Part shown: positions 447 to 49,968 of the stretch, piece by piece
How positions within the stretch are numbered: position 1 is the stretch's first letter
How the letters are laid out: each line of letters begins with the position of its first letter
From: Monocercomonoides exilis PA203
Lineage: Eukaryota > Protista > Preaxostyla
DNA: 64,000 nucleotides
Assembly: GCA_001643675.2 (NCBI GenBank)
Contig: LSRY02000035.1
Location: 868,001 to 932,000 of the forward strand
Reading direction: 5' to 3'
Translations under genes and position numbers: made by a program
Notes under the pieces: generated by a model
What the model saw: only the letters and a program-made list of their open reading frames with translations
What the model was told of the DNA's origin: nothing
Database searches by the model: none

Positions 447-3400
447 ATGGCTTGTTTTTGGAACATGTCTTCCGACGAATTGCTTGGTCCACAGGACCCT
501 GTCGCAGTTGTAGGGCTTGGAGCTCGTTTGCCCGGAGGTGCTAATTCACCTGAACAGTTTTGGAAATTACTTCTTGAAGGATATGATGGAATTTCTGACA
601 TACCTAAAGAACGTTGGGACGGAGCGTATTTTCATGACCCAGAAAATCTTGGACTCGTTGGTAAATCTATTCAAAATAAAGGTGGTTTTTTGAAAGGATA
701 TAACATTGATGAAATTGACTTGAAATTCTTTTATCTTTCACCAAGAGAAGCAAAGACTCTTGATCCCAATCAGAGACTTTTGTTGGAGGTTACATATGAA
801 ACATTTGAAAATGCTGGTGTTCCCTTGGAGCATATCAGCGGTAGCAGGACTGGAGTTTTTGTGGGTATCTCTGCAACAGATTATTCACATTTACAATTTC
901 CAGACATCAACACAATCGATGTGCACACACAAACAGGCGTTTCCACTTCAATCAACGCAAATAGATTGTCATATTTTTACAATTTAATCGGTCCTTCATT
1001 CATTGTTGATACAGCTTGCTCATCAACACTTGTTGCATTAAACTGTGCTTGTCAATCAATGAGAACCAGAGAATGCGACTCAGCTTTGTGCGGAGCCGTT
1101 AACCTTATGATGTATCCAGAAATCTCAATTGGATTTTCAAAACTTGGAGTTCTCTCGCCTGACGGTCATTGCAAAGCATTTGATGCAAAAGCAAATGGAT
1201 ACGTGAGATCTGAAGGTTGCGGAATGGTTCTTTTGAAACGTCTTTCCGATGCAGAAAGGGATGGTAATCGTATCTATGCAGTTATCAGAGGAACTCATGT
1301 TGGCTCTGATGGGCATTATCAACAACAAATGACTTCTCCATCAGAACAACAACAAGCCGTTGTTTTGAGAGAAATTTTGAAGAAGTCATCAATTCAATCG
1401 GCAGATGTTGGATATGTTGAGTCACATGGAACAGGTACATTCGTTGGAGATCCTATTGAATGCCGTTCTGTAAGCTCAGTGTTGAATATCGGACGAAAGG
1501 ATGATGAACATATTTTAATTGGCTCCGTGAAATCAAATGTGGGCCATTTAGAGCCTGCAGCTGGTATTGTATCAATTATTAAAGTTTCAATGTGCCTTAA
1601 GGAGAAGATGATTCCAGCAACAATCAGCGTAAAAAAACCAAATCCAAATATCGACATGCAGAAACTGAACTTGAAGATCGTAACATCACATATGAAATAT
1701 CCAGAAGGCAGAAACGGAATGCCAAGAACTGCAGTTATTTCCGCTTTTGGCTTTGGAGGAACAAACGGAGGATGCGTGATGCAGGAATACACCGGAAATA
1801 AAGGCTTGAAGGATGTTCCAAGCGGACTTAAGGAAATTGAAAGAGAAGAACTGTTTATTCTTTCAGCCCGATCTGTCGATGCTTTGAAAGGATACGCCAA
1901 AAAATTGGCAGAATTCATGTCTTCACATTCTTGCCCACCCATCCAGCACATCGCATACACACTTGGCTGCCACAGAACACAACACAAGCAATGCAGACTC
2001 GCATTCATTGCCAGATCGAAAGAAGAAGCTGTTAAGGAGCTGAATGCATTTGTGAATGATGAGAAAGACACAGGAGCGGTCCAAACACGCTTCACAAGCA
2101 TGATGCCATCAGAGAAGAAGAGAAAGTTATGCCTTGTTTACTGCGGACAAGGATCACAATGGTTTGGAATGGGACGCGCTTTATACAGAGAAAACGTTGT
2201 ATTCAGAGAATGGATGGACAGAATCGATAACTGCCTGAAGGAAGCAGGAGCAGATTATTCAATTGTCGAGGAGATCATTACAGGAACAGAGGAGACATCT
2301 CATGTCGATCAAGTGGAATATCTCCAGCCAATCTTCTTTGCCATCCAGGTTTGCGTTTACAAGGTGATGGAAGCAGCAGGCTTGAAGCCTGACGCAGTTG
2401 TTGGCCATTCACTTGGAGAGATTGCAGCTGCTCATGTTTCTGGAGCCTTGTCAATTGAAGATGCCACCAAGGTTGCATGGGAAAGAGCAAAAGGACAGAA
2501 GTTCTGCAACGGTATGGGACACATGGCTGCTGTGACTGGTGAATATGCCGATCTGAAGAGACTTATTGAAGGCAGAGGAGTTGACATTGCAGGACACAAC
2601 GCTCCAACTCGATGGAACATTTCTGGTGAAACAGCTGGAATGGACGAAGTTGAGCGAATTGCAACTGAAGGAGAAGAAACACCAGTGCGCGTTAGAAGAC
2701 TTCTTGTCGACGAGCCAATGCATTCGCAGTTTGTCGATCTCATTCACGACCAGCTTGTTGGAGGATTGAAGAACATTGTTCCACAGCGCCCAACAATTCC
2801 ATTGATCTCAACATATACTCCACAACAGAAGGACTTCAAAATGGACGGAAAATACTGGTGGGCCTCTCTGCGTAGCCCTGTGCAATTTATGGATGCTATT
2901 CTGGAGATGGTTAGAAGGACATCTGCTGAGTCAGACGCTGAAGAAGAAGAAGCTGAGAAAGAAGGCGAAGAGGAAGGAGAGGACAATTCACATCACGATC
3001 ACAGAGAAACCGAATGGGTGTTCTTGGAATGCGGACCTCACAACGTTCTCAGAACATTCCTCGGAGAAATTATGGGTTCGGAAGGAAAGCCGTTTATTTA
3101 CGTGCCAACTTTGTTGAGAAAAGCAGAAAACGAACGTTTGCTGATGTTGCGAACATTGGCCAACATGTTCTCATTGGGATACAATTTGGATCTTAAGAAT
3201 TCTGTCTTCATTCCATACAACACATACTACGAAACTAAAGCCCGCGTTTTGTTCGAAGAGTCCTCGTTGTCCACAAAAGAAGACGTTCCTCAATATTACT
3301 ATGTACCAAATCTTCCTCTTTATGCTTGGGCTCGCACAAAATGCTGGAACGAGTCACCTGTTCAGCACGAGCACAGATTGGGATCAAGCGACAACCATCC

Positions 3401-6400
3401 AATCGCTCGTATCAGACAAGACACACTCAATCCTTGCTGGCAGAGCGATATCTCCACATCACACATTCCATGGGTCGTTGACCATTGCCTGCAAGGAAAC
3501 ATTGTTGTGCCAGGTGTCACATTCGTGGAATGCATCCTGACATGCGGACGTCGTGTCTTTGGTGACAGGCCGTTTTGGCTGAGGAATGTGCATTTCAAGA
3601 ACGCATTCTATATGAACAAAGGAGATGTGATGCGTGTGAACATCTCTCTTGATCCAATCTACAAAGAAGGCTCTCGCTCATCAACAGTCGATGCTTACAA
3701 TGTCACTTTATCTTCACGTGTCCTTCCAAAAGGAGAATATCAAGTGAATTGCGCTGTTGTGATTGAAGCCGAAGATTCCATTGCAGAGAAAGAAAAAGCA
3801 GCAGTCAAGAAAGTTCCAGGCCTTCCACCGAACTTCCAAATTTCGCATCCATCTCAGGCTTTCGATGATATCGATCTTGATGCCTTCAGAAAGCTGTGCC
3901 CAATTGAAATTCCAACCGATCAATTCTTCTCTCAACTGTGGGAAGATGGTTTGGAGCTGAGACGTCAGCTGCGTTTGTGCAGAAAGATCTGGATCAATGA
4001 CAGAAACAATCCTCTGATGTCCATTGCATACATTGAAGTCAACCCTGAGACCACCGAAGAAGAATTAGGCAGATGGGGATTCATGTACCCACCTTTCCTC
4101 GATTCTTGCCTGCAATCTGGTCTGTCTGCAAGAGAGAAAAGAGGAGCATTCTTCCCTGTTGAAGCTTATCGTGCCCGTTTCGCTCGTTCTGTGCCAAAGA
4201 CCGCTCGCCACTGCTGGGCCTTGTCACGAAAGGACCCTGTTACAGGCAGATTGTCAATGACATGCTGCGATGACGAAGGTAAGGTCTATGGATCACTTCA
4301 AGATGTCCTTATAAGATATTTGGAGTCAGGAAAGAGAGGAACCAAGCTTGGAATGATTGGAGGAACTGAGACACCAGTCTTTGAACACAAATGGGAATAC
4401 CTCTCAACAATTCCAGCACACGGAATTGAAGAGGAAACAGGAGACTCTCCCTTGCCATCCCCTGAAGACCCAGCTTTTGTTGCATCATGCGACGATATGA
4501 TGAGGAAAATTGGAGCAGAATTCCACACGCAAGAAATGGCAGATGTGATTATTCCACTGAACAACATGCTGACAAATGCTATTGTTTTGGAAGTGTTCAG
4601 AACAAAATTGAATCTGTGGAAACAAGAAGCCGAACTGATTCGCTCAAAGAAGATTGACGTTTCTGCAATCAAAGCTGTCCCAGTGAAGCAACTTGCTGAA
4701 TCAGTTAACATTCTTCCATTCTATCACAGACTTTTCTTGCTGCTCTGTCGCTATCTTTCTGAAGCTGGATACCTCGCTTTGTCATTAATTCCAGAAGCTC
4801 AACAAAAAGCGAAGAGCGAACCAACATTCTTCATTGAGAACTATGTTGCTGCTCCACTTGCACCATTCTTCCACGATGAGACTCAACCATTGCCGCACAA
4901 TGAGGACTGCGAGGCATTAACTGCTGAAATTCTTTCACGCTTCCCACAGATGCGTCCATCAACCATGCTCATGATGGATGTTGGCAGAAAAATGAAGGAT
5001 GTGATTGTCGATGGAGAAAAAGCCGTCACTCTTATCTTCAAAGATAAAGGACTTGCTGATGCTGTCTATAGAGATGATGGTGAAGTTCGTACCTTCAACT
5101 ATGTGGCTCAAGGTGTTCTTGCGTGCCTTATAAAGACAATGAAAGAAAAAGAGAAGAAAGAAGGAGAAGCAACCAGCGATAAGCCATTGAAGATTCTTGA
5201 AGTCGGTGCAGGAACTGGAGGTACCACTGCTTATTTGATGGAATTGCTTGATCCACTGACAACAACATACACATACACAGATATTTCTGCATCCTTCTTT
5301 GGAACAGCCAAACAGAGATTTGCTCGCTATGCATCTTTCATGAACTTCAAAACACTTAACATTGAAGAGCAACCAATTGAACAAGGATTTGAACCACATT
5401 CACAGGATATTATCGTTGCAGCCAACGTCGTTCACGCTACAACCGATCTTTCAGTGACTCTTTCTCACATCCAGCAACTTCTTAAACCAGGAGGGCACCT
5501 GATTCTCTTGGAAGCCTTGAATGGATTGAGATGGTTGGATATTGTATTTGGTCTTACCGACGGATGGTGGGCATTGCAAGACAAACAGTTTAGGCAGCAT
5601 CCTCTTCTTACTCCTGCAATGTGGACAGACATTCTGAAGCGTTCAGGATTTGAGTCCAGCCACGTGTTCTCTGAATGGAAAGAGTTCGGAACAAATGGAG
5701 CTAGAATGGGACGTGTTGGTATTCCAGTTGCACAAACACCAAAGACATCACAAAAGCAGAAAGAGGAACTTCAAGCTTCGATGAATGCCAAACAAGAAGA
5801 AACTCTCAAAAAGATCCAAACAGAAGCACCCACAACTTCAGCCATTGTGTTTGCTGAAGAGAGAAATGTTGTATCTGGAGCAGTTATTTCTTCACTTTTG
5901 CGCGATGGACATTATGTCATTGCCGCCTTGAAACAAAAGACCCAATTGAGCTCTGCTGACTTCTTGAAGGAGATTTGCACCAAGCCAGTTGACCACTCAA
6001 AGAATCATCTTCTGCTCTCTCAAAATGAGATCAGCGTGTTAGCTGCCAATTTCCATGTGATGTTTGTCGAAGAAGCAGCAACATCACGTGCAGGATATGA
6101 TGCAATCTTCAAACACATCACAGAAGCCTCTAAGCCTCCGGTTGTCTCAATAGTTCACGGATGGTCACTTGATCTGCCAGCAATGGCTGATACTGAAAAG
6201 GAAATCATGCAAGGATTCGAGCTGAACGTATACTCACCATTGTACCTTGTCCATACACTTTCTGACGTCTCAAAAACTTCAGCTGTGTCGTCTCATATTA
6301 CAACATGGGGCGTTACACAGGGCGTGTGGACTGTGGACGGAGCATCAAGACCAGGAACAGTGGGAGTTGGGCAAGCAACTCTGTGGGGTCTGAACAGATG

Positions 6401-9400
6401 TATCTTGAATGAATTAGGCTCTGTACATCCACGTTCAATTGATCTGTCACTTCATCCAGATCAGACTGAATTGGATTCATTTATCTCTGTAATAGTCTCA
6501 ACGGCATTTGATGCTAAGACCAAATGCAACTCGGTTGTTTCATCTTCTTCCCAGACAGCTGAAACAAGCGCAGTTGTTCCACTTTATGAAACTGAAATTG
6601 CAATCAGAGGAAACAAATGCTTCGCTCAAAGATTGATTCAACATCAACATTCAGATGAATTGCACTTGATCAATCAAATTGCACCATCTTCTGAAGGCTG
6701 CTACGCACTTACAACTCCAACAAACAACAAGCTCATCCTTGAAGAAAGAAAGAGATTGGATGTTATTCCAGCCGGAGAAGTTGAAGTCCATGTTGCTGCA
6801 TCAGGTATCGTGTACCGTGATATTATGATGTGGAGCGGAAGACTTCCAGAGAATGCAAGACAAGGTTCCAACGTTGGTTTGGAATTTGCTGGTGTTGTCA
6901 GCCGTGTTGGTGAAGGAGTTACAAACGTTGCTGTTGGAGATCGCGTGTTTGGTGTCGGAAGAGAATGCGCTTCATCTTACACAGTTGTCCACTCAACAAA
7001 CATCGGAAAAGCTCCTTCGACATATTCATGGGATCAGCTTGGTGGTATTGGTTTGGAATTGATTACAGCATACTACTCTTTGGTGACTGTGGGAAGAATG
7101 AAGAAGGGAGATTACGTTTTGATCCATGCTGCGACTGGTGGTGTTGGAATGTGCGCTCTCTCTCTTTGCCGCTGCTTCGGTGCTATTCCCATCTGCACCA
7201 CACGTTCTGAAATGAAGAAGAGATTCTTGGAATACATGGGAGTGAAACACATCGTTTCATCGGAAGATACTTCCTTCTGCGAGAAAGCTCGTGCCCTGAC
7301 ACCAAACGGACGTGGTGTTGATATCGTTTTGAACTCTCTTCCAGGACAAGAGAACATCCACGCCGGTCTTGCTGCATTGGCAAAAGGCGGAAGATTCGTT
7401 GAAATCGGAAAAGTTGATCTTTACGGAGGAACTATGATCTCATTGCAACCATTTATCGGAAATGTTTCATACAATGTTGTTGCTATTGATCAGAAAATCC
7501 TTGACGATGATGATCAGCTTGGACCAATCTTCGAAGATTGCTCAAAACTTTTGTTTGAAGGAACGTTTATTCCTCCACCAATTACAAGCTATCCATTGTC
7601 ACAAGCTGAAGATGCATACAACTTCTTCAAAGAAGGAAAACACATTGGAAAAGTTGTTCTTTCACCAGTTTCACTTTCATTTGCACCAACTGCCATTCCA
7701 CCAGTTCGTAGCATTCTTCCTCTGTCTTCTCAGGGCTCATACATCCTATCAGACGGAACATATCTCGTAACAGCCGGAACAGCTGGATTCTCATTCGAGC
7801 TTGCTGTTGGACTTCTTGAAAGAGGCGCTAAGCATCTGGCTCTTTCATCTCGTTCTGGAGCAGGAGACATTAACCGTCAAAGACAATTTGAAGCACTGAG
7901 AAAGAAATATGGAGCAGAAGTCAGAGTGTTCAGCTGCGATTCATCATCTGCTGAACAAACAAGAGAAATGCTGGCTGAGATCAGAAGAAGCATGCCTCCA
8001 CTGAGAGGACTTATCCATGGTGCTATGCTTCTTCACGATGGCTACATGATCAATTTGGATCACAAAGCATTCTTTGAAGTGCTTGGCCCCAAATCTCTTG
8101 GTGCATGGCTTCTTCACGATGATACAGTGAAGCACAATGATCCAATCGAACAGTTCATCGTTCTTTCTTCCTTGAACGTTGTTGTCGGAACACACGGACA
8201 GGCAAACTATGCCTCTGCCAATATGTTCCTGGATGGTCTTGTTCAGCACAGACGTGCACAGGGCTTGCCAGCCATGTCAGTCCAGTGGGGTGTGCTGGGT
8301 GGAGTTGGCTATGTCCACAGAAACAGCTCCACTTTGGGAGCAAACATGTCTCAGTTTGGCTTCCGTGCCTTCTCTCCACAATGGGCAAACAGAATGCTCC
8401 ACACATGCCTCGAAGCTCAGGCTGATATCGAAGAAGAGCATGTTGGAAACCTTCCAGCTGAACGCGCTCTTTCAGCTGCATTGGCCCAACAACAGGCAGA
8501 TGCATTCAAATCAATTCCAGTTGGTCTTCTCCCCGCTTCTCTTCGCCCTGAAAACGAAGCAAGCCATCCATCACACTTCTTCGAAGGTGCACACAACAGA
8601 AACAACATTGTGGCTGCACGCAAAGTGTTCAGATTCCCATCATCAGTACCAACATCTGTTGGTGTGTTCAATGTGAGCTGGGAGCCTTTGTTCGAGTTCA
8701 TGTCTGCCCTTCCTGAGACCGGCAGATTCAAATATATTAAGCAAGAGCTCGAAAAGGATCTGCAAATGAGCGGAAAGAAGAAGAAGTCTGGCGGAAGCGA
8801 AGGTCTTTCTGTGACTGAGAAAGGATTGGCTGGTTTGATGGATGATGGAGCCGATTCAACAGGAGCTGGAGAGTCATCACTTGATGAATCTCTGACAGTT
8901 TCAGAAAAACTGAAGACCATCACATCAGAAGAAGAAGCAATTGCATTCCTTTCTCGTGCCATTGCTGCTCAATCCGCTCAAGTTCTTGGCATCAGCTCAT
9001 CTGAGACCATTTCATTGGATGTTCCTCTGTCTCAATATGGGTTGGATTCTTTGACTGCTGTTGAAATGAAGAACTGGACTGAAAAGCAAGTGAAAGTTGA
9101 TATTCCCGTCGTCGACTTTGTTAGAGGTCCATCATCAGATCAACTGGCACACAGCATGTTGACTAAGTTCTACGAAAGCTACGGAAGACCAAAGGCGTCA
9201 GCCGCTCAAGCTGAAGCATCTGATTCCTCAAAAGCCGCAACATCTAGTCATCCTTCAGCATCAGCCTCGTCTGCATCTGCTTCAGCTGCAAGCAGCGCAT
9301 CATCTTCAGCGTTTGACTCAGCAAGCGGTGGAGCAACAATATCAGTTGACAAAGACGCACCAGTTCTGGAAGAGAAAGAAGAAGAGAAGCCAAAGAGAAA

Positions 9401-11045
9401 GTCTCCATTGACAGCATATGTATTCACTGGCCAATCAGGATTGAAAACAGGAGTTGGAATGGATCTTTATGATGCTTATCCAGAAGCAAGAGAAATTTGG
9501 GACAAATGCGATGCTCACTTTATGGATCAGCTTGGCGTTTCGCTCTTGAAGATTATTCGTGAAAACCCAGTATCATACAAAGTTGACTTTACAGACGGAG
9601 AAAGAGGAAAAGAGCTGCGCAAGAAGTTTATGAATCTGAGAGTTACTGACGACGATGAGGTGATGAAAGAGGTGCATGCAATTGATCCAACAATCGATGC
9701 ACGCGCATTCCCAACAGTCAACGAAGATACAGCCCATTACACTTTCTACTCTCCAAATGGACTTCTGAACATGACTCACTTTGCTCAGCCAATCATCATC
9801 ATCTACGAGTATGTTGCTTTGGCTATTCTGAATGCACAGAAAGAGAAGAGCGGAGGAAAAGACAGCAAGCACAAAGTGAATCATCTGTTCTGCGGACATT
9901 CATTGGGTGAATACTGTGCACTGACCGCAGTTGGTGGCATTGCACCTGCCCACGAAATGGCCATGGTGTGCTTCATCAGAGGAATGGTGATGCAGACGTG
10001 TGTGCCTCGTGACAGAATCACCCACATGACAGACTACGGAATGGCAGCTGTGTCTCCACTGCGTGTTGCTTCGTGGTTCAAGATTGAGCATCTGAGGAAA
10101 GTGATGGAATGCACCATCAACGCCTGCGGAGGCAGACTCCTTCAGATTGTGAACTACAACGTCTACAACGACCAGTATGTTGTGTCAGGTGAGCGATATG
10201 CCATCTGGCAATTGGGACTTGCACTGACCCACGTCGAAGAAGAAAGCAGAAAGAGACTCGACAACCCGAAGTCGAAGCTGAGCGGAGAAGCACTCGCTGA
10301 TTCAGTATTGGCTGATATTGAAACTGTGTGCTATGAGCATATCTTCCAACATCCATTCACTCAAACTCCACTCGAAGTGCCACGTACAACATCTGTGATG
10401 CCTCTGAAGGGTATTGACATGCCATTCCATTCTCGCCTTCTGAGAAAAGTGGTTCCATTGTTCCGATCATTCCTTGACTCCAGACTGCCAACAGTTGACA
10501 AATTCGATTATGCAGGCACATTGGTTGGGAGATTCATCACCAACACATACAGCAAAGAAGTGTTCTCTTTGAATCTTCCATATGTGAGACAGATCTTAGC
10601 AGTGACTGGATCACCTTATCTTCGCGATGCCATGGGACAGCTTGTCGATGAAAGCATGAACGAGATGGTGATGAGATATGAAATGAATGCAGCTGTGAAG
10701 AAAGAAGGAGAAGCAGCCAAGCAGAGATTCCCGCAGTGGCTGAGCATGACACCCAACGAGCGCTGTCGTCTGATTCTCAGAGAATCCCTTTCCTACCAGT
10801 TTGCCTCGCCTGTGCAGTGGATTGATGCCCAGAACACGCTGATGGGCAGCAAGATTAAGAGAGTTGTTGAGATCGGCCCATCAAAGACACTCTCAACAAT
10901 GTTCTCAAAGTCTATTTTGAAGGCCAAAGCAAGCGCAGAAGGAGACAGAAAGGCATTGATCAAGGAATTAGACCAGATTTCTGTATTTACATTCAGCACA
11001 GATAAAGATGCACTTATGAAAATGGCTGAAGAAGAGACCGAGTAA
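447..11045 (+). CDS. Iterative type I highly-reducing PKS/FAS-like megasynthase, KS-AT-DH-cMT-psiKR-ER-KR-ACP plus C-terminal fungal-FAS-type MPT domain (3532 aa, single exon; start may be ATG 465)
   Basis: KS triad DTACSS (~1008), ESHGTGT (~1420), VGHLE (~1540); AT GQGSQW and GHSLGE (~2403); DH DHCLQGNIVVP (~3480) and PPFLDSCLQ; MT ILEVGAGTGGTT (~5195) and ANVVHAT; ER LIHAATGGVG (~7120) and GKHIGKVVL; KR GQANYASAN; ACP GLDSL (Ser ~9048); MPT VFTGQ..GMDLY, GHSLGEY (~9894), DMPFHS, YQFASPVQW, VVEIGPS. Confidence 0.95.
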   Translation: MACFWNMSSDELLGPQDPVAVVGLGARLPGGANSPEQFWKLLLEGYDGISDIPKERWDGAYFHDPENLGLVGKSIQNKGGFLKGYNIDEIDLKFFYLSPREAKTLDPNQRLLLEVTYETFENAGVPLEHISGSRTGVFVGISATDYSHLQFPDINTIDVHTQTGVSTSINANRLSYFYNLIGPSFIVDTACSSTLVALNCACQSMRTRECDSALCGAVNLMMYPEISIGFSKLGVLSPDGHCKAFDAKANGYVRSEGCGMVLLKRLSDAERDGNRIYAVIRGTHVGSDGHYQQQMTSPSEQQQAVVLREILKKSSIQSADVGYVESHGTGTFVGDPIECRSVSSVLNIGRKDDEHILIGSVKSNVGHLEPAAGIVSIIKVSMCLKEKMIPATISVKKPNPNIDMQKLNLKIVTSHMKYPEGRNGMPRTAVISAFGFGGTNGGCVMQEYTGNKGLKDVPSGLKEIEREELFILSARSVDALKGYAKKLAEFMSSHSCPPIQHIAYTLGCHRTQHKQCRLAFIARSKEEAVKELNAFVNDEKDTGAVQTRFTSMMPSEKKRKLCLVYCGQGSQWFGMGRALYRENVVFREWMDRIDNCLKEAGADYSIVEEIITGTEETSHVDQVEYLQPIFFAIQVCVYKVMEAAGLKPDAVVGHSLGEIAAAHVSGALSIEDATKVAWERAKGQKFCNGMGHMAAVTGEYADLKRLIEGRGVDIAGHNAPTRWNISGETAGMDEVERIATEGEETPVRVRRLLVDEPMHSQFVDLIHDQLVGGLKNIVPQRPTIPLISTYTPQQKDFKMDGKYWWASLRSPVQFMDAILEMVRRTSAESDAEEEEAEKEGEEEGEDNSHHDHRETEWVFLECGPHNVLRTFLGEIMGSEGKPFIYVPTLLRKAENERLLMLRTLANMFSLGYNLDLKNSVFIPYNTYYETKARVLFEESSLSTKEDVPQYYYVPNLPLYAWARTKCWNESPVQHEHRLGSSDNHPIARIRQDTLNPCWQSDISTSHIPWVVDHCLQGNIVVPGVTFVECILTCGRRVFGDRPFWLRNVHFKNAFYMNKGDVMRVNISLDPIYKEGSRSSTVDAYNVTLSSRVLPKGEYQVNCAVVIEAEDSIAEKEKAAVKKVPGLPPNFQISHPSQAFDDIDLDAFRKLCPIEIPTDQFFSQLWEDGLELRRQLRLCRKIWINDRNNPLMSIAYIEVNPETTEEELGRWGFMYPPFLDSCLQSGLSAREKRGAFFPVEAYRARFARSVPKTARHCWALSRKDPVTGRLSMTCCDDEGKVYGSLQDVLIRYLESGKRGTKLGMIGGTETPVFEHKWEYLSTIPAHGIEEETGDSPLPSPEDPAFVASCDDMMRKIGAEFHTQEMADVIIPLNNMLTNAIVLEVFRTKLNLWKQEAELIRSKKIDVSAIKAVPVKQLAESVNILPFYHRLFLLLCRYLSEAGYLALSLIPEAQQKAKSEPTFFIENYVAAPLAPFFHDETQPLPHNEDCEALTAEILSRFPQMRPSTMLMMDVGRKMKDVIVDGEKAVTLIFKDKGLADAVYRDDGEVRTFNYVAQGVLACLIKTMKEKEKKEGEATSDKPLKILEVGAGTGGTTAYLMELLDPLTTTYTYTDISASFFGTAKQRFARYASFMNFKTLNIEEQPIEQGFEPHSQDIIVAANVVHATTDLSVTLSHIQQLLKPGGHLILLEALNGLRWLDIVFGLTDGWWALQDKQFRQHPLLTPAMWTDILKRSGFESSHVFSEWKEFGTNGARMGRVGIPVAQTPKTSQKQKEELQASMNAKQEETLKKIQTEAPTTSAIVFAEERNVVSGAVISSLLRDGHYVIAALKQKTQLSSADFLKEICTKPVDHSKNHLLLSQNEISVLAANFHVMFVEEAATSRAGYDAIFKHITEASKPPVVSIVHGWSLDLPAMADTEKEIMQGFELNVYSPLYLVHTLSDVSKTSAVSSHITTWGVTQGVWTVDGASRPGTVGVGQATLWGLNRCILNELGSVHPRSIDLSLHPDQTELDSFISVIVSTAFDAKTKCNSVVSSSSQTAETSAVVPLYETEIAIRGNKCFAQRLIQHQHSDELHLINQIAPSSEGCYALTTPTNNKLILEERKRLDVIPAGEVEVHVAASGIVYRDIMMWSGRLPENARQGSNVGLEFAGVVSRVGEGVTNVAVGDRVFGVGRECASSYTVVHSTNIGKAPSTYSWDQLGGIGLELITAYYSLVTVGRMKKGDYVLIHAATGGVGMCALSLCRCFGAIPICTTRSEMKKRFLEYMGVKHIVSSEDTSFCEKARALTPNGRGVDIVLNSLPGQENIHAGLAALAKGGRFVEIGKVDLYGGTMISLQPFIGNVSYNVVAIDQKILDDDDQLGPIFEDCSKLLFEGTFIPPPITSYPLSQAEDAYNFFKEGKHIGKVVLSPVSLSFAPTAIPPVRSILPLSSQGSYILSDGTYLVTAGTAGFSFELAVGLLERGAKHLALSSRSGAGDINRQRQFEALRKKYGAEVRVFSCDSSSAEQTREMLAEIRRSMPPLRGLIHGAMLLHDGYMINLDHKAFFEVLGPKSLGAWLLHDDTVKHNDPIEQFIVLSSLNVVVGTHGQANYASANMFLDGLVQHRRAQGLPAMSVQWGVLGGVGYVHRNSSTLGANMSQFGFRAFSPQWANRMLHTCLEAQADIEEEHVGNLPAERALSAALAQQQADAFKSIPVGLLPASLRPENEASHPSHFFEGAHNRNNIVAARKVFRFPSSVPTSVGVFNVSWEPLFEFMSALPETGRFKYIKQELEKDLQMSGKKKKSGGSEGLSVTEKGLAGLMDDGADSTGAGESSLDESLTVSEKLKTITSEEEAIAFLSRAIAAQSAQVLGISSSETISLDVPLSQYGLDSLTAVEMKNWTEKQVKVDIPVVDFVRGPSSDQLAHSMLTKFYESYGRPKASAAQAEASDSSKAATSSHPSASASSASASAASSASSSAFDSASGGATISVDKDAPVLEEKEEEKPKRKSPLTAYVFTGQSGLKTGVGMDLYDAYPEAREIWDKCDAHFMDQLGVSLLKIIRENPVSYKVDFTDGERGKELRKKFMNLRVTDDDEVMKEVHAIDPTIDARAFPTVNEDTAHYTFYSPNGLLNMTHFAQPIIIIYEYVALAILNAQKEKSGGKDSKHKVNHLFCGHSLGEYCALTAVGGIAPAHEMAMVCFIRGMVMQTCVPRDRITHMTDYGMAAVSPLRVASWFKIEHLRKVMECTINACGGRLLQIVNYNVYNDQYVVSGERYAIWQLGLALTHVEEESRKRLDNPKSKLSGEALADSVLADIETVCYEHIFQHPFTQTPLEVPRTTSVMPLKGIDMPFHSRLLRKVVPLFRSFLDSRLPTVDKFDYAGTLVGRFITNTYSKEVFSLNLPYVRQILAVTGSPYLRDAMGQLVDESMNEMVMRYEMNAAVKKEGEAAKQRFPQWLSMTPNERCRLILRESLSYQFASPVQWIDAQNTLMGSKIKRVVEIGPSKTLSTMFSKSILKAKASAEGDRKALIKELDQISVFTFSTDKDALMKMAEEETE

Positions 11046-11424
11046 AACAAAGGAAATTACAAATAAATTTAACCAATGAGAAAAATTAAAAACTAAGTTC
11101 TGTAAAATTTACAAAAGTCATTTGTCTCTATTTACCTTTTTTGATAAATCATTTCTTTTCTCGTTCTCAATCATATCAATAGCTTAGATCTCTAAAGAAT
11201 ATACGTATTATTCACTTTAGTCTTCACTCCATTTTACCAATTATTTTTGTGTTTTCTATTAATGATTTCAGCGGATTGTATTTTAGCGATATTTAACCAA
11301 CAACGCGCATTCGAAATCATGAATATTTAATTGTTATTTTTATATCTTACCAAGTCTCATTAAACATTTTTGTTCATTATTTTGGGAATTAAGATCAACA
11401 ATAAGTTTAGATTCAAAATTTTTT

Positions 11425-14400
11425 ATGGATGATGAATTTGTTCTTCCTTCCAAGCTGAATATTGATGATTTTTTATCGGTTATATTTAAATTTCATAAGA
11501 TTTTTTAAAATCAATTTATTCTTTATGCTTAAACACGATTTTAAATCGAAAAATTTGAATTTATTTCAGGCTCGGCAACAAGAGATCGAACAATTAAAGC
11601 AACTTATTAGAGCGGTATGATATATATTTTTGAAAATTTACATTTTGGCTTTTTTATTTTTTTTGTGATTTACAGAAAAGAAGAGAGAAAAATACTCGTT
11701 CTTTCCAAACTTTGCCTCGTTTTCTCAGAAGAAGGACACAAAGTCACAACCTTCATCGTGTTCCAGCATCAATAAGATGCTGGGCAGAAAAAGAATTTAA
11801 GGCGAGCCCCCCAAATCATCACCCACCGTCAAGGAAGAAAAGAAGATTTACAAATCATCTACTTCATCCTGATTACCGTTGGGCAAGAGAAAGCGTCGAA
11901 GATCGAAAGTTGGATCCAACACAACAGTCTTTGATAACACCTTCAAGCAGCTCAGAAGAAAAGACTTATCTGGATATTCACAACACCAATAGAGGTGTTT
12001 GGCTTGAAACTCACATATGGCATGCAAAAAGATTTCATATGGAAAACAAATGGGGATTTATGCTTGCAAAAAGTCCGACATGCAAATCATACACACAAAT
12101 ACATAAAGCACTATCTGAAGGTTGTGTGCTTCATGATGCTTCATATCTTACTCCTCTTCGAGTAAAAGCATCTCATGCAGAACTAGAGGCACTGTTGAAA
12201 AAGTCTGTTTATTGTGAAACCTGTGATTTTTCCGATACGTTATTTCTTGCGGGAGGGCGAGAAGTTCTTGGCCTGCTTCATTGGAGTAAAGGAGATAATG
12301 ATTTTTCAGGTCCTGCTCCAGATGGAATAATAGGAAGAGTTGGTATCATGTACGGATATGAATTGCCGAATGAAAACAACGATAATCAAAGCACTTCATC
12401 TGCAGCGGACTCGTTGGATTCTCTTCCGTTGAACGGATCATCATCTTCTTCATCTGAACAGGAATTTGACATTAATACTTCAACTTCTTCTTCTCCTGCA
12501 CCTTCGGTTTTGTTTTGGATCCATCCAACAATGCGCGCAGAAGCTATAGCTGCTCTCGTTCTGTGTGCAGTTGAAATAGAGAAAGAACGGATGCTCAAAG
12601 AATCAGCGGAAGAAATGCAGAATCAACAGCAACCGATGGACGAAAAAGAGTCAGCTGCGGAGAAATTGCAAAGCAAAATGAGAAAACGACTACGACTGTC
12701 ATTTCCGCGACTGCAAAAGCCGCTTAGCCAAGCGGTTCCATCGCCTTTAAACAAATTGAGGAGAAAGAAGCTTCGGTCAAGTTCGAGAAAAAGTGCAAGA
12801 GACTCAAACCAAATTAGAAAGGCATCACATGCAGAAACTTGGTATGCGGGGAATTTTTCGATTGCGGATGAAAGAAAGAGGCTATGCAGATTTCAGCTGA
12901 GAGGAGCGCAGGCGCTGCTTATGCTCCAGACAACTTTGTCACCATTTACAGTTAGACCTGATGATGAAGGCAACCAATTCTCAAATCAATCTTCGCTTTG
13001 CAATTCTTCTTCTATTCTTTCGTTGACTGACGACACATTCATCCAATCTTCACTTCACTCATTGCATCAATCGCTAATCACATCATTGCCTCCTCAAATT
13101 CAGACTCCCTCATTCCGTCAGAGCCTTCTTCGTCAGCTGGAGCAGTGGCGCACTCTGCTCTTTCTCCCATCTTCATCATTTCTCACACCGCAGCGCTGTA
13201 TCCTGCCATTCACTGTGACTGACCCGCGGCTTCGCTTGTCTGTCTCCGTCTTTTCATCATCCAAGAAAAGGGCAGCATTTCGTCTACCGACTGCTGTTCT
13301 CAGAGCACTCGCATTTCTGGCGCAAACAACGAACGAAGTTGTGTTGAGAGAATGGGTGGGCAAATGGGCAGAGCAGAAGAGATACAAGCAGCAGAATCCA
13401 AAAGAGTTCTCAAAGGTGAAAGAGGAACCAACAGTGGGTGCGATGGCTCCACTTCCAAATGGCCTTCCTCAGCCTGCTCAGAAGCGAAGGTTCGTTTTGC
13501 CAGATGATGATGAAGCAACCGAGGAGTTTTGCTGTTATGCCACTTCTCCCTCAAAGTGGATTGGCGGAATGACGCAGCATCGTCCATCTGAAGAATCTTC
13601 AGATGCTTCCTCCTCTTCTTCTTGTTCAATGTCTGTTGATGATCCTGCGTTAAGCGTCAAGTCTACTTCGGCTGCTCCTGAACGTTCTGCTCAAACAGCT
13701 GCAGTTGCCTCTCAATCATCCTTGACAAGCAAAGGTAGTAATCTGATTCCTCTTGTCAGTCCTCTTCATACTTCTTCACTTCTGTCGTGGATGTCATCTC
13801 CTGACCATTTTATAAGAACATCGCTTCTTTCCGAAATGAAATCAATGAATGTGATAAAGGCATCACAATCATCATCATCTTTTTCTTCTTCTGATGCTTC
13901 AACAGTCAATGATGAAATTTCCAATGGATCAGACTTGCAGCAACAACATTCGAAAGCTCAAACTTCTTCTGCATCTGTTTCTTCTTCTTTTTCTTCTTCC
14001 ACTTCAGTTAAAAACCATGTTTCTCTTCCATATTCAACGAATGCCTCAATTTCTCAGATGTTTATCGTTGCAGATGAATGCATTTCTGATTGGGTTCACA
14101 GAAGAACATACAGATTTGAGGAGAAAAAGAAGCAAAAAGCGAAAACGAAGGAAAAGCGAAGAAAAGCGAAAGAAGAAATAAGATTGAGGAAAAAAGAAAA
14201 AGCAAAGAAAAGGAAGGAAAAATTGAAGAAGAATAAGCAAAATTCTTCAGTTCAAAATGATGTTGTATCAAAGGATGCAACAACGCAGCCTGCAAATGCA
14301 TCTGAAGCAAAAACCGGAGAAATGGAAATAGAAATGAAAGATGAGGCTGAAAATGCATCTGATTTGCAATCAACGACGAAAGAAGTTGAATCTGGTACCA

Positions 14401-17400
14401 TTCAGCCAAAAGAAAAGGATGTGAAAAAGCAGCAAAAAAGACCCACATCTAAAGTTGTTTCGCAAAATAACAAACCGAAAGTCAATCAAAACAATTCAAT
14501 AACATCTTCTTCATCAACAATGGCTTTGGAGGAAGCTCCCTCAAAAGAGCCACAACCTCAGCATCGCAATCCTCCAAGCAGATATCCAGTCACACGGTGG
14601 AACCCTCCACAGCACCCGCTCTGCCTTACTCCATCTATCCTCGTTGTGCAACAGCCTGGCGTCTATATTCCGAAATTGTATGCAATTACCTCGCAAATAC
14701 AAACAAACGAAGACGGAAGCGTTACAGTTTTGGATGATGCTGAAAGGAAAAAGCTGAAGAACAAGAGGAAGAAAGAGAGGAAAAGAGCAAAGATGGAAAG
14801 GGAAATGGAAGAATTGACAAGGAAAAAGAATGAACAAAAAGGTCAAAGCAAAGAATCGAAAAACAAAACAGGAGCAGCTAAATCGCAAAAAAAGAATATG
14901 AGCAAAACAACGGAAGATACTCATTCAAAAGAAGATGAAGAGAAAATGGCTGAGAAAGAGAAGCTCGAAAAGGAGAAGAAAGAATTGGAAGCATCCATTT
15001 TGAAGGGACTTCTTCCAGAAAAGCCAAAAGTGAATGAGAAAAAAGGAAAGAATAACCAAAAAAGAAACAAGAATCAGCAACTCATTGTTCATTTGGAAGA
15101 CGACACAAAAGAAATAAAGTCAAATGAAACACAAACAAAAAAACGGAGTGCGAGTAAATCAAACGAAAGATCAGCTGCAGAAATTCAAGAAAAGAATATG
15201 TCCAAAGATTCATCTGGAAATGTCAATTCTTCGGAATTGATCCGAGACTCAAGTTATTCACAGAAAAAAGATGTTCATTCAAAGACAGTTTCTTTATCTT
15301 CATCAAATGATCAGAATTCGAAACATTTCTTTTCTGCTTTATCTTCGCCTCATTTTTCGTCTTCTTCCTTTTCTGAGACACAGCCATTGCTTCCTCTGGG
15401 TGGTGTGGATGTTATTCTCCCTTCACAATTTTCACTTCCATTCTTTCATTCGTTTGTGAAGGCTGGAGCTCTTCCGATTGGAATCGATGATGTTGAGTGG
15501 CTGAATGTTGATTCGTCTTCAGTCGGAATATGCACAAAATGTGAAGATTCAACATTGACTGATACAGACAGAACTTTATCTTTGTCGTCGCCTTCATCTT
15601 CATGTGATCCTTCAAATACCACAATTACAACAGAAAACTGTTCTACTCAAAATACTTTGCAATTATCGCAAACGACCAATTGTTTCAGTCAACCAACACT
15701 TTTATTCCCACTGTCTGCGCCAACATTTTTACCTGACACAGCTTCATTCTCTCGTCTATCTGCTTTGGAACATTATAAGCTTTTGGCCAAGCATGCAAGT
15801 CGGCCACCTTCTGCTCGCATAAATTACGAGAAAAAAGGAATTGACTTTCCATTTACGTGCGAATGGAAGCTTCTTTTTAGTGAGGAAGAAGCAAACGACA
15901 ATCAAAACAATTCATTAAATGCAATTGCAATGAGATCAGAGCCAGCCAAAGAAAATGCATCATCCGCAATCATTCAATCAAATTCTGAAGAGGAAGCAAG
16001 TACAGTGGAACATTTAAGCCACGAAAAGAAAGAGTTGCTAACAGACAGCGAACTTACACGAAGATTGGAGGAGAGAGAGAAAATGGAGCGGAGATACGAG
16101 GCAATGAAAAGGCAACTTAAAAAGGTCGAAAAATTAAGAGCTATTAGACGAGCCCGTCTGGGAGTTGAGAGACAAGATATTAGAGTTATTTATAAGAATT
16201 TGAAAAAAGAAGAAACAAAGAAAGAAGATGAAAAAATAAAAGAAGTTGTTGAAGTTAAAAAAGCTTTTGTTGAAGAAACAAAAAATATGGAAGAAGAAAA
16301 ACAACATAACGACAAAGACACAGAAAGAAATGCAGTTTCAAATGACGTTTCACAAGCAACAACCGAACCAGAAGCAAAAACTTTGTCAGCTGGTGTAAAT
16401 GCGAAAATTGACTCAAACTCAGAAGAGAGATCAGATAAAGCATTGTCGCTTCAGCCAACATCAATTTCTTTGGAAGTGAAAGATGTTCCTTTACCTGATA
16501 ATCCTTCTCCATTTGGTGGTAAAACAGATTCTTACATTCTTCCTCCTCCACCAATCGTCAAAGTTACGTTGTCTCCTCCTCCTCAGCCACTCACAGTAAT
16601 TCTACCATTTTACAAAGAAGCTTTTGTCAGGCCATATGAACTCGATGAGAGAGTGCTGATGAGGATGGCAGAGTACAAATGGAACGAAAAAAAAACAAAT
16701 GTGCCAGCGTCTTTGACAGGTAGCGCTGAACAAATGTGTTTAAAGAAAGCTGAAATACACAAAAATAAGATAACTGTAATCAGAAATATGTTGTTTCTTT
16801 CTTCTGTTTTCCCCGTTATTTCGAAATTTCATCCAATCCATCGAACTTTTCCAAATCGAAAAGGAGGTTTATATACTGATCCAATAATTAAAGATTCTTC
16901 CACAAAAAGAAAAGAAGACGATAAATCAAACAAAGAATCAAATGAATATGAAGATGAGATCGAAACGGATTTACTGAATGCAGAAGTGGCAGATATATCA
17001 TTCATTAAACCTATGAAACGATCAACTTTTGAACAGTTATCAGAAAAAGATTTGACAGAGAATATTAATAAGTCTTCAAGCATAAAACAGGATCGCTCAG
17101 AGGAATCTGACATTACTTCTGTTACGTCTTTCATTTCTTCAGCTAATACAGAGATGTCTTTTTGTACCACCTCTTCTCCACAATCCAACGATCATAAATT
17201 GGAATGCTTTGAAAGGACTGATCAATCAAATGTTTCTGCTGATATTTTCTCCACATCAAGCACAGATGAAAGTGTTTTTCAGAGAATGCCTTCTTTTTCA
17301 CTTGTTGCAGTATCGATTCGTTGCCTTTGTGGATCGTTGCCACCATATTCGCAAATATTTTCCCCACTTATTACAGATCACATTGCATTTTCATTATCGG

Positions 17401-17737
17401 GATATAATTGGAGGGGTGTGGATATTTCCAAAAAAGAACAACGAAGAAGACGAATGATGCTCGGCTTTGTTTTATCCGGGCATCATTCATTTTTGCATGG
17501 TGGAATCAGCGTTGGAATTGGCTTTGTTTCCGCGAGGAGATTATGGAAGCATCAGGAGATGGTAAATTCTTTAAGGTTAGCAATTGTTTATATTTTTATT
17601 TATTTGCTTTAACTTAGTTTTTATTTTCTATTTTTAGGAAAAGCAGTGATAACCCTGAGCATTTTCATTTGGCTCTTGTTCAACCTCCAAATTCTTCGGC
17701 TCTTTTTCCTGTAAATCTAACCATAACAGCATTATGA
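11425..17737 (+). CDS. POP1: RNase P/MRP protein subunit POP1, ~2032 aa; exons 11425-11478, 11570-11614, 11676-17575, 17638-17737
   Basis: GT-AG splicing joins MDDEFVLPSKLNIDDFLS-ARQQEIEQLKQLIRA-KRREKNTRSFQTLPRFLRRRTQSHN; POP1 motifs WLETHIWHAKRFHM, LHDASY, GGVDVILP, RPPSARINYEKKGIDFPF, LGFVLSGHHSF; spliced length 6099 nt is a multiple of 3. Confidence 0.88.
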
Positions 17738-45781: not shown

Positions 45782-46699
45782 TTAAAAATTAAAATTTAAA
45801 ACTTCCATTTGTTTATAAATATTATTGACGGCCAAGGAATCCAAAAACGTGTAATAAGTGCTTTCTTCTTGCCTTTTGTAAGCGAAAGAATCCATGTAGG
45901 ATTGAATCACAGAATGTCTAACTCCATGTGGTGGTAAACTTTTACGAAACAAGGACCAGAGACCTTCTATACGGTTAGTGTGAGTGTTTGTATCTTTATT
46001 AATAAATGTTTTTTTGTGATTGACCATTCTATGTGTGTAACCAAGATTTTCCATTCCATTGTAGGCACGCCAGCTGTCACTGTTGATTATAGAACCCAAT
46101 TCAATGTTTCTTCTCACTGAAGAATGCAAAGTGTGCTTTTTTCTATCTGGAACCATTTCCATAAACATAATGCTTTTTCCTTTTCCTGTTTGAGGTAAGT
46201 CAATGCCACCGAAAACCCACTGTTGAGGTTTTTTTCTTCCTTTTTTATATTTTCTGCGAAATAATAGCATCTCATCTATTTGCACTATTCTATTGACTCC
46301 ACCAATCCTTCTCTTCATAATATGCATTTCCCGAGACACAGCGCTCCTAAAAAGAGAATAAATATGGCAAACCGTGTTTTTGGATAGATTTGTAAGTAAA
46401 GTTGCCTGTTTTGCTGTAATATTTATCCAAAAATATAGTGACAACTTCATAAATTGATGCATTTTTATTCGAATATTTTCAAATATTGTATTTTTTCTTA
46501 AGCTGACTGATTGGTGCTGGCAACGGTAGCGAAATCTTTCATCTACTTCTTTTTTGAATCCTATCATCTTTTTGCATTTGCTGCAGTAAATTTGCTTCTT
46601 AACCAAATTCCTTTCAACAAGAAAATCAACGGTTTTTTCTTCATCGTTGAAGGTTTGGCTCAATTTGGATATTTCTGATTTTTTATTTGAATTTTCCAT
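45782..46699 (-). CDS. Merlin / IS1595 (ISXO2-like) DDE transposase
   Basis: N-terminal CxxC..RYRC, SLRKNTIF, IGGVNRIVQIDE, WVFGGID, VPDRKKHTL, GSIINSDSWRAY, HRMVNH, HTNRIEGLW; first ATG at 46699. Confidence 0.92.
   Translation of the reverse strand: MENSNKKSEISKLSQTFNDEEKTVDFLVERNLVKKQIYCSKCKKMIGFKKEVDERFRYRCQHQSVSLRKNTIFENIRIKMHQFMKLSLYFWINITAKQATLLTNLSKNTVCHIYSLFRSAVSREMHIMKRRIGGVNRIVQIDEMLLFRRKYKKGRKKPQQWVFGGIDLPQTGKGKSIMFMEMVPDRKKHTLHSSVRRNIELGSIINSDSWRAYNGMENLGYTHRMVNHKKTFINKDTNTHTNRIEGLWSLFRKSLPPHGVRHSVIQSYMDSFAYKRQEESTYYTFLDSLAVNNIYKQMEVLNFNF

Positions 46700-49937: not shown

Positions 49938-49968
<31 letters not shown>

What the first reader, a model, noticed from the sequence alone, without database searches (positions are those of the whole stretch)
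447..11045. Chimeric megasynthase: a reducing PKS module terminated by a fungal-FAS malonyl/palmitoyl transferase
Seen: domain order KS-AT-DH-cMT-psiKR-ER-KR-ACP, a Ser/Ala linker (~9190-9400), then a ~500-aa domain (~9410-10920) with TAYVFTGQ..GMDLY, NGLLNMTHFAQP, GHSLGEY, RGMVMQTCVPRD, IVNYNV, GIDMPFHS and YQFASPVQW. Established: the first part is the animal-FAS/HR-PKS architecture, which normally ends in TE, R, C or carnitine-acyltransferase release domains, or none. The second part matches the MPT of the structurally unrelated barrel-type (fungal/CMN) FAS, which loads malonyl and offloads product onto CoA. Inference: the two type I lineages have been fused here, giving a synthase that releases a fully reduced, possibly methyl-branched chain directly as acyl-CoA, with no ATP-dependent reactivation. 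That would suit an anaerobic protist. I do not know this architecture from described enzymes.
Basis: partly seen in the sequence, partly recalled or inferred. Interest (0 to 1): 0.92.

Follow-up and report, generated by a model that had tools for sequence, protein, structure and literature searches.

The report
PKS-type synthase ending in FAS transferase
An oxymonad protist without mitochondria encodes a giant, expressed lipid-building enzyme that joins an animal-FAS/polyketide-type assembly line to the product-release domain of the unrelated yeast-type fatty acid synthase, a natural hybrid not described in the literature I could search; it may be the fatty acid synthase reported missing from this organism.

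Summary
Window 447-11045 (+) is one uninterrupted 3532-aa ORF with the order KS-AT-DH-cMT-ER-KR-ACP, then an 80-aa Ser/Ala-rich linker, then a complete malonyl/palmitoyl transferase (MPT).

- **MPT identity.** It matches the fungal FAS beta-chain MPT (E 5e-64), and its last part matches the FAS alpha-chain N-terminus. FabD scores only 1e-10. The modelled fold agrees (pLDDT 95.6).
- **Organism.** The genome is Monocercomonoides exilis PA203; assembly size and contig number match exactly.
- **Not an artefact.** The genome holds three intronless paralogs. The same architecture occurs in Blattamonas and Paratrimastix, a matching MPT fragment in Streblomastix, and more in metagenomes. Contigs from RNA libraries cross the ACP-MPT junction without a mismatch.
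- **Restricted to Preaxostyla.** Of 264 MPT-bearing proteins collected, only these Preaxostyla-like ones carry PKS domains.
- **Catalytic motifs.** All are intact in this copy, including the cMT His/Glu pair and the MPT Gln, Ser, Arg and His.

Most likely it is an iterative, fully reducing and possibly C-methylating synthase that passes its product from ACP to CoA through the MPT. That mechanism is inferred, not shown. A published M. exilis analysis found no de novo FAS, so this family is a candidate. I found no paper describing the architecture. The scan noted this gene before on this same DNA.

Verdict: a new variant of a known kind.

The parts
447..11045 (+). Whole gene: one intronless ORF of 3532 aa plus stop. 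The public model starts at nt 465.
   Evidence: RNA-library contigs are colinear over 5500-11320 with no joints.
495..1631 (+). Ketosynthase (KS), aa 17-395. It carries DTACSS (Cys190), HGTGT and NVGH.
   Evidence: Pfam PF00109 1.9e-83 and PF02801 3.4e-35. The motifs are conserved in 6 orthologs.
1638..2060 (+). KS-AT linker, aa 398-538.
   Evidence: PF16197, PF22621 and PF22336.
2136..2909 (+). N-terminal acyltransferase (PKS/MAT type), aa 564-821, with GHSLGE (Ser655) and Arg680.
   Evidence: PF00698; motifs.
3426..4334 (+). Dehydratase (DH), aa 994-1296, with HxxxGxxxxP at aa 1013.
   Evidence: PF21089 and PF14765.
5133..5654 (+). C-methyltransferase (cMT), aa 1563-1736. It keeps the SAM motif EVGAGTGG, His1663 (NVVHAT) and Glu1689.
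   Evidence: PF08242 5.5e-18. The best solved relative is the CurJ cMT, 8e-50, with the same motifs aligned. The dyad assignment is from memory of the literature.
6771..7661 (+). Enoylreductase (ER, MDR type), aa 2109-2405, with the canonical GGVG nucleotide motif.
   Evidence: PF08240, PF00107 and PF13602. The best solved relative is mycocerosic acid synthase, 7.5e-87. Motif comparison.
7755..8297 (+). Ketoreductase (KR), aa 2437-2617.
   Evidence: PF08659 5.7e-49.
8952..9170 (+). Acyl carrier protein (ACP), aa 2836-2908. The phosphopantetheine site is the DSL Ser2868 (nt 9048-9050).
   Evidence: PF00550 and PF23297.
9171..9410 (+). Low-complexity Ser/Ala/Lys/Glu linker, aa 2909-2988. Length (45-83 aa) and sequence vary between orthologs.
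9411..10946 (+). Malonyl/palmitoyl transferase (MPT) of the barrel-type FAS lineage, aa 2989-3500. Key residues are Gln2996, Ser3152 (GHSLGEY, nt 9900-9902), Arg3178 and His3328 (PFHS). The segment at about aa 3438-3497 corresponds to the yeast FAS alpha N-terminus.
10947..11042 (+). Short C-terminal tail, aa 3501-3532, partly conserved among orthologs and modelled as helix/strand packed on the MPT.

Best explanation
This is an expressed gene of Monocercomonoides exilis. It is one of three paralogs of a family found, in my searches, only in Preaxostyla. It encodes an iterative, single-module type I synthase.

Proposed cycle:
- The PKS-type AT loads malonyl, and probably the acetyl primer, onto the ACP.
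- KS, KR, DH and ER run full reductive cycles.
- The cMT may add methyl branches in some cycles.
- The C-terminal MPT sits on a flexible 80-aa linker after the ACP, in the place where animal FAS has its thioesterase. It takes the finished acyl chain from the ACP onto its active-site serine and passes it to CoA.
- The product therefore leaves as acyl-CoA, as in yeast and mycobacterial FAS, without an ATP-consuming acyl-CoA synthetase step.

What is shown: the domain identities, the intact catalytic residues, conservation of the architecture, and a continuous transcript. What is inferred: the direction of transfer, the chain length, methylation, and the physiological role as the cell's de novo fatty-acyl-CoA source.
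For: - **Sequence.** The tail matches fungal FAS beta MPT at 5e-64, and its end matches the FAS alpha N-terminus. CMN FAS scores 5e-32 and FabD 1e-10.
- **Catalytic residues.** Gln, the GHSxG Ser, the malonate-binding Arg and the PFHS His are invariant over 53 MPTs. PMC12720414 shows that the equivalent yeast Arg1834 swings away to open the palmitate channel and that the serine carries palmitate.
- **Fold.** The AF2 model has pLDDT 95.6. Foldseek's top hits are fungal FAS MPT, with TM 0.88 to the isolated yeast MPT, then the Mtb FAS MPT, then FabD.
- **Tree.** The tails form one clade inside the barrel-FAS MPTs, far from the proteins' own AT domains. The branching follows the species order.
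- **Intact PKS domains.** All PKS-domain motifs are intact in the window's copy.
- **Conservation.** Three paralogs lie in this genome. The same architecture is in Blattamonas and Paratrimastix, an MPT fragment of the same clade in Streblomastix, and more in metagenomes.
- **Transcript.** In three RNA runs a single contig spans 8182-11320 with 0 mismatches, at k-mer depth of about 170-200.
- **Supporting genes.** The genome holds a PPTase hit and carboxyltransferase (ACC-like) loci.
- **No rival FAS.** KS domains occur only in six PKS-type ORFs, so no type II or barrel FAS was found. Karnkowska et al. 2019 could not find short-chain fatty acid synthesis genes in M. exilis.
- **Precedent.** Dictyostelium Pks16 is a PKS-type protein thought to be that organism's primary FAS.
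Against: - There is no biochemical evidence for the product or for the direction of transfer.
- The protein already has a competent-looking AT, so the MPT could be a loader rather than a releaser.
- The cMT looks active, unlike the dead MT of animal FAS and Pks16. That fits a specialised methyl-branched product better than plain palmitate.
- The ER nucleotide motif is altered in paralog P0003 and in the Blattamonas copies, so the family is not uniformly fully reducing.
- The ACP-MPT docking prediction gave no answer.
- Contigs from RNA libraries show presence, not transcript ends or expression level.
Confidence: 0.6

Rival explanations
1. It has the same chemistry but is not a housekeeping FAS. 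The family would make a specialised lipid or polyketide, methyl-branched or in some paralogs partly unsaturated, released as a CoA ester for further tailoring. Bulk fatty acids would come from ingested bacteria.
For: - The cMT keeps its SAM motif and His/Glu pair and is 8e-50 to the active CurJ cMT.
- There are several diverging paralogs, with ER the most diverged catalytic domain and its motif altered in some copies.
- The PKS part is closest to bacterial PKS and mycocerosic acid synthase, not to FAS.
- M. exilis feeds on bacteria in a medium that contains fatty acids.
Against: - No other de novo FAS candidate turned up in the genome.
- The family is kept in both free-living and gut-dwelling Preaxostyla.
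- Depth in the RNA libraries is high.
Confidence: 0.28
2. The MPT works mainly as a loader. It would transfer a starter acyl group (for example a dietary long-chain acyl-CoA) or malonyl from CoA to the ACP, like the SAT domain of non-reducing PKSs. Release would happen by another route.
For: - MPT catalysis is reversible, and palmitoyl-CoA acylates the yeast MPT serine.
- The malonate-binding Arg is invariant.
- The organism takes up lipids from prey.
Against: - An intact AT with Ser and Arg is already present and could load malonyl.
- No TE, R or C domain, nor any other release domain, is present in any ortholog. Without release by the MPT the enzyme would have no offloading route in cis.
Confidence: 0.1
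3. It is an assembly or annotation artefact, or the MPT is a decaying remnant without function.
For: None found. The assembly is based on Nanopore reads, which can carry indel errors.
Against: - The frame is uninterrupted in three paralogs.
- The same fusion occurs in independent assemblies of other genera.
- RNA-library contigs cross the junction with 0 mismatches and no joints or indels.
- The catalytic residues are invariant, and the MPT is 58-70% identical among the oxymonad copies and 42% to Paratrimastix, similar to the other domains.
Confidence: 0.02

Closest known systems
MPT domain of fungal-type (barrel) type I FAS, e.g. S. cerevisiae Fas1 C-terminus plus Fas2 N-terminus. Relatives also occur in Diphylleia, Thecamonas, Aphanomyces and Ustilago.
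   Same: The fold is the same, including the fungal-type extensions. The Gln, Ser, Arg and His active-site residues are retained. The segment that yeast encodes on the alpha chain is present. Identity is 35-42%.
   Different: Here the domain is not part of a barrel. No MaoC-type DH precedes it and no Fas_alpha_ACP follows it. It sits after a PKS-type ACP at the C-terminus of a KS-AT-DH-cMT-ER-KR-ACP chain.
Animal FAS, Dictyostelium Pks16 and mycobacterial mycocerosic acid synthase (iterative, fully reducing type I synthases).
   Same: The domain order KS-AT-DH-(MT)-ER-KR-ACP is the same. ER-KR is 7.5e-87 to MAS and 1e-66 to pig FAS. KS-AT is 1.5e-150 to MAS and 9e-135 to Pks16. Pks16 is thought to be a protist's primary FAS.
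   Different: Those enzymes end in a thioesterase or in nothing. Here the end is an MPT. The MT of animal FAS and Pks16 is inactive, whereas here the motifs are intact.
Bacterial cis-AT modular PKS modules with cMT (CurJ, CurL).
   Same: These are the best sequence matches for KS-AT (CurL 2e-162) and for cMT (CurJ 8e-50).
   Different: Those are single-pass modules of assembly lines. This is a stand-alone eukaryotic protein with its own transfer domain.
Fungal highly reducing PKSs with a C-terminal carnitine-acyltransferase-type release domain (recalled from the literature, not tested here).
   Same: The concept is the same: an acyltransferase rather than a hydrolase ends a reducing PKS.
   Different: That domain has a different fold and family, and a different acceptor.
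MPT of corynebacterial/mycobacterial (CMN) FAS I.
   Same: The superfamily and the role are the same: release as acyl-CoA.
   Different: It is more distant: E 5e-32, the alignment breaks into 4-5 pieces, and identity in structural alignment is 22-23%.

Membership tests
Barrel-type FAS malonyl/palmitoyl transferase (MPT) | Sequence is closer to FAS MPT than to FabD or PKS AT. | tested here: met
   The match is 5e-64 to fungal FAS beta 1690-2073, against 1e-10 to FabD. In the tree it is separated from the protein's own AT by a branch of about 4 substitutions per site.
Barrel-type FAS malonyl/palmitoyl transferase (MPT) | Catalytic Ser (GHSxG), catalytic His, oxyanion Gln and malonate-binding Arg (yeast Arg1834). 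| tested here: met
   Q12, S168, R194 and H344 of the piece are invariant in 53 MPTs. The Arg lies 26 residues after the Ser, as in the T. lanuginosus chain aligned. The role of yeast Arg1834 is described.
Barrel-type FAS malonyl/palmitoyl transferase (MPT) | Complete domain, including the part carried by the alpha-chain N-terminus in yeast. | tested here: met
   Piece residues 454-513 match FAS alpha residues 8-67.
Barrel-type FAS malonyl/palmitoyl transferase (MPT) | Fold: alpha/beta-hydrolase core plus ferredoxin-like subdomain with the fungal-type additions. | tested here: met
   The model has pLDDT 95.6. Top Foldseek hits are fungal FAS MPT at E 1e-25, with TM 0.88 on the isolated yeast MPT 9pqz_G.
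Barrel-type FAS malonyl/palmitoyl transferase (MPT) | Transfers malonyl to ACP and long-chain acyl from ACP to CoA. | not testable with these tools
   This needs enzyme assays. The ACP-MPT docking prediction gave no answer.
Barrel-type (fungal/CMN) type I FAS as a whole | MaoC-type DH, TIM-barrel ER, Fas_alpha_ACP and the scaffolding domains. | tested here: not met
   None of these Pfam families is in the protein. It is not a barrel FAS; only the MPT comes from that lineage.
Iterative fully reducing type I PKS / animal-type FAS | KS-AT-DH-ER-KR-ACP on one chain with intact active-site motifs. | tested here: met
Iterative fully reducing type I PKS / animal-type FAS | C-terminal thioesterase for release (animal FAS). 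| tested here: not met
   There is no TE hit. The MPT occupies that position.
PKS C-methyltransferase (active) | SAM-binding motif plus a His/Glu pair 26 residues apart. | tested here: met
   EVGAGTGG, NVVHAT (His1663) and LLEA (Glu1689) align with CurJ. The catalytic role of the pair is recalled from the literature.

The most novel reading that the evidence does not exclude
This family is the long-missing de novo fatty acid synthase of the amitochondriate oxymonads and their free-living relatives. It would be a natural hybrid in which an X-shaped, PKS-derived synthase offloads acyl-CoA through an MPT. The MPT could have been salvaged from an ancestral eukaryotic barrel-type FAS that the lineage otherwise lost, or acquired by gene transfer. 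It would be the first natural bridge between the two structurally unrelated type I FAS architectures.
Probability: 0.38. Interest if true: 0.82.

Novelty: new variant of a known kind. Interest (0 to 1): 0.72.

Why it matters
The two type I FAS architectures, the animal X-shape and the fungal/CMN barrel, are textbook examples of independent solutions. Their release chemistry differs: hydrolysis by a TE versus transfer to CoA by the MPT.

- **Portability of the MPT.** A natural enzyme that puts the barrel's MPT behind a PKS-type ACP shows that the MPT can be moved and can be matched to a foreign carrier protein. Engineers of FAS and PKS have wanted exactly this for making acyl-CoAs directly.
- **A gap in M. 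exilis biology.** The published genome analysis found elongases but no de novo fatty acid synthesis (PMC6759080). These three genes are concrete, testable candidates.
- **Energy economy.** Direct release as acyl-CoA saves the ATP-dependent reactivation step, which is plausible economy for an anaerobe living on substrate-level phosphorylation.

Tried and rejected
- **ACP-MPT docking** (complex prediction, aa 2822-2915 with the MPT): no answer, score 0.00, controls not run. It counts neither for nor against binding.
- **Careful tree.** The IQ-TREE search on 47 MPT rows did not finish in two 300-s runs, so only quick trees are reported. The grouping of the Preaxostyla clade with one long-branch Coemansia paralog (SH-aLRT 90-95) is not trusted, and the origin of the MPT is left open.
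- **KS-AT homolog search**: the score ranking was swamped by multimodular bacterial PKSs whose scores add over modules. It shows only that nothing outside Preaxostyla exceeds about 40% identity. No proper KS phylogeny was made.
- **PF08326 (ACC_central) in the own genome**: nothing rang in the controls either, so the result is uninformative. PF01039 was used instead.
- **Supplementary tables** of Karnkowska et al. 2019 are not held, so I could not see whether these genes were listed there under another heading.
- **Rejected readings:** bacterial contamination (the neighbours are POP1, TOR and TTL), a chimeric assembly, and a tail that is an ordinary second PKS AT.
Full report
**What is there**

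Window 447-11045 (+) is a single open reading frame of 3532 codons. Pfam finds, in order:
- KS at aa 17-395
- KS-AT linker at 398-538
- AT at 564-821
- DH at 994-1296
- cMT at 1563-1736
- ER at 2109-2405
- KR at 2437-2617
- ACP at 2836-2908

A second acyltransferase-fold domain lies in the last 550 residues. The second GHSLGE begins at aa 3150, which is nt 9894. Between the ACP and the last domain lies an 80-residue stretch rich in Ser and Ala.

**What the C-terminal domain is**

- *Sequence against solved structures.* A search with aa 2985-3532 gives fungal FAS beta chains as best hits: 7q5s_B residues 1690-2073 at E 5e-64, and yeast 2uv8_G at 8e-56. This is exactly their MPT domain. Residues 454-513 of the piece separately match residues 8-67 of the FAS alpha chains. 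That is the part of the MPT which yeast encodes on the other subunit, so the domain here is complete and continuous. Mycobacterial FAS I follows at 5e-32, and FabD reaches only 1e-10.
- *Conserved residues.* In an alignment of 53 MPTs from Preaxostyla, other eukaryotes and bacteria, four residues are invariant: the oxyanion Gln (aa 2996), the GHSxG Ser (3152), the Arg 26 residues later (3178) and the PFHS His (3328). A 2025 cryo-EM study shows the equivalent yeast serine carrying palmitate. It also shows Arg1834 swinging away to open the acyl channel (PMC12720414).
- *Fold.* The AlphaFold2 model is confident (pLDDT 95.6). Its best structural matches are fungal FAS MPTs at E 1e-25, with TM 0.88 on the isolated yeast MPT. 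Next comes the M. tuberculosis FAS MPT, then FabD.
- *Tree.* The Preaxostyla tails form one well-supported clade inside the barrel-FAS MPTs. A very long branch separates them from the same proteins' N-terminal AT domains.

The tail is therefore an MPT of the barrel-type FAS lineage, not a second PKS AT.

**What the rest is**

The domain order is that of animal FAS and highly reducing PKSs. By sequence, however, the nearest solved relatives are bacterial:
- KS-AT: a bacterial PKS 7zma (3e-177), CurL (2e-162) and mycocerosic acid synthase (1.5e-150). These rank ahead of Dictyostelium Pks16 (9e-135), LovB (5e-110) and animal FAS (about 1e-100).
- ER-KR: mycocerosic acid synthase (7.5e-87) ranks ahead of pig FAS (1e-66).
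- cMT: CurJ (8e-50).

The active-site motifs are all present in this protein:
- KS: Cys, His and His
- AT: Ser655 and Arg680
- DH: HxxxGxxxxP
- cMT: the SAM motif, with His1663 and Glu1689 spaced 26 residues apart
- ER: GGVG
- KR: the conserved catalytic stretch
- ACP: DSL

I recall from the literature that this His/Glu spacing is the catalytic pair of PKS C-methyltransferases. The alignment to CurJ shows identical motifs.

**Whose gene it is, and whether it is real**

The window's genome has 82,301,135 bases in 101 contigs. These are exactly the figures of the Monocercomonoides exilis PA203 Nanopore assembly (PMC8767320). The neighbours are eukaryotic: POP1, TOR kinase and a tubulin-tyrosine-ligase family gene.

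- *Paralogs.* The genome holds three paralogs with the MPT tail, all in uninterrupted frames of 3533, 3672 and 3639 codons.
- *Other species.* The same full architecture is in two Blattamonas nauphoetae proteins and one Paratrimastix pyriformis protein. Fragments come from Blattamonas (cMT to MPT), Streblomastix strix (a 406-aa piece covering only the MPT region) and three metagenome contigs.
- *Restricted distribution.* Among the 264 MPT-bearing proteins returned by two very large searches, only these ten carry the PKS modifying region. All others are barrel-type FASs.
- *Vertical descent.* Within the clade the branching follows the species relationships, which suggests the fusion was present in the Preaxostyla ancestor. 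The three M. exilis copies are recent duplicates.
- *Transcript.* Four metatranscriptome runs of one study hold the junction. In each of the three runs laid, a single contig covers 8182 to about 11320 with no mismatch, gap or joint. That span runs from the end of KR through ACP, linker, MPT and the stop codon into the 3' flank. K-mer depth is about 170-200, and further contigs tile 5500-8207. Contigs cannot give transcript ends or levels. That they stop short of the next gene, at that depth, speaks for RNA rather than contaminating DNA; this last point is my inference.

A chimeric assembly is excluded.

**How it most likely works (inferred)**

- The AT loads malonyl, and probably acetyl.
- KS, KR, DH and ER iterate, and the cMT may methylate in some rounds.
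- The ACP is tethered by a flexible linker to the MPT, which sits where animal FAS has its thioesterase. The ACP hands the finished chain to Ser3152.
- CoA then takes the chain, so the product is an acyl-CoA.

No TE, reductase or condensation domain exists in any ortholog, so the MPT is the only offloading candidate in cis.

**Is it the missing FAS?**

The genome supplies what such an enzyme needs: a phosphopantetheinyl transferase hit and three carboxyltransferase (ACC-like) loci.

KS domains occur only in six PKS-type ORFs:
- the three described here;
- two bimodular genes that also contain an ER, which an earlier scan note reads as FAAL-primed;
- one gene with ACP-KS-AT only.

No type II or barrel FAS was detected. 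Karnkowska et al. [quoted passage not shown] These genes are thus candidates for the missing de novo synthase. Dictyostelium Pks16 is a precedent for a PKS-type primary FAS.

**Cautions**

- The cMT looks active, which fits a branched or specialised product.
- The ER is the most diverged catalytic domain among the paralogs: 44% identity in P0003, against 76-89% for the KS, AT, DH, cMT, KR and ACP domains of that paralog.
- The ER GGVG motif reads GATG in P0003 and ADAIG or TEAVG in the Blattamonas copies. Not all family members need be fully reducing.
- The MPT reaction is reversible, so a loading role cannot be excluded.
- The docking prediction gave no answer.

**Origin**

Barrel-type FAS with this kind of MPT is widespread in eukaryotes, including Diphylleia, Thecamonas, Aphanomyces, Ustilago and Mucor. 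The Preaxostyla clade's position among them is unresolved. It attaches to a long-branch Coemansia paralog in quick trees only, and the careful search did not finish. Retention from a lost ancestral barrel FAS and gene transfer both remain possible. The PKS part has no relative above about 40% identity outside Preaxostyla.

**Novelty**

Full-text searches turned up no description of the architecture. The terms covered:
- Monocercomonoides, oxymonad or Preaxostyla together with polyketide or fatty acid synthase;
- palmitoyl transferase together with polyketide synthase.

The sequences are public under automatic names such as "putative polyketide synthase PksE". Both halves belong to well-known families, so I rate this a new variant of a known kind rather than categorically new. 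Other first-stage notes of this scan flagged the same gene on this same DNA.

Noticed in passing
P0003 (own genome C2:~1841916-1842854) and Blattamonas P0005/P0006, ER domain; window equivalent nt ~7119-7160: The ER nucleotide-binding motif GGVG is canonical in the window's copy, P0002, P0004 and Paratrimastix. It reads GATG in paralog P0003 and ADAIG or TEAVG in the Blattamonas copies. ER is the fastest-diverging catalytic domain, so some family members may have lost or changed enoyl reduction.
   Followed up: partly
own genome C28:714808-726186 and C28:1019581-1030896; C5:1337000-1346000 (L005): M. exilis has three further PKS genes. Two are bimodular ORFs of 5325 and 5237 codons, each with two KS and a PKS-type ER. 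One has ACP-KS-AT only.
   Followed up: partly
window 48790-58158 (-): A TOR kinase gene is split over at least three ORFs: mTOR/HEAT, FAT/FRB, and PI3K/FATC. It presumably has introns. The 54-58 kb part has unusually high GC (0.55) and strong GC skew (+0.3 to +0.39).
   Followed up: no
window 19273-21042 (-) and 45782-46759 (-): There are two transposase ORFs in AT-rich intergenic DNA: DDE_Tnp_4 (Harbinger/IS5-like, 589 aa) and an IS1595/ISXO2-like one (325 aa).
   Followed up: no
window 11712-17612 (+): This is a very long POP1 (RNase P/MRP subunit) homolog. POP1_N lies at its start and POPLD only at aa 1335-1385, which implies large insertions.
   Followed up: no
window 6586-6622 and 8178-8211: The RNA-library contigs of all three runs break at the same two places with overlaps of about 30 nt. 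These are probably assembly-graph branch points at words shared with the paralogs, not biological ends.
   Followed up: no
own genome C51:187187-187390 (L004): This is the only 4'-phosphopantetheinyl transferase (PF01648) hit in the genome, in a 350-codon frame. It is the likely activator of all six carrier-protein synthases.
   Followed up: no
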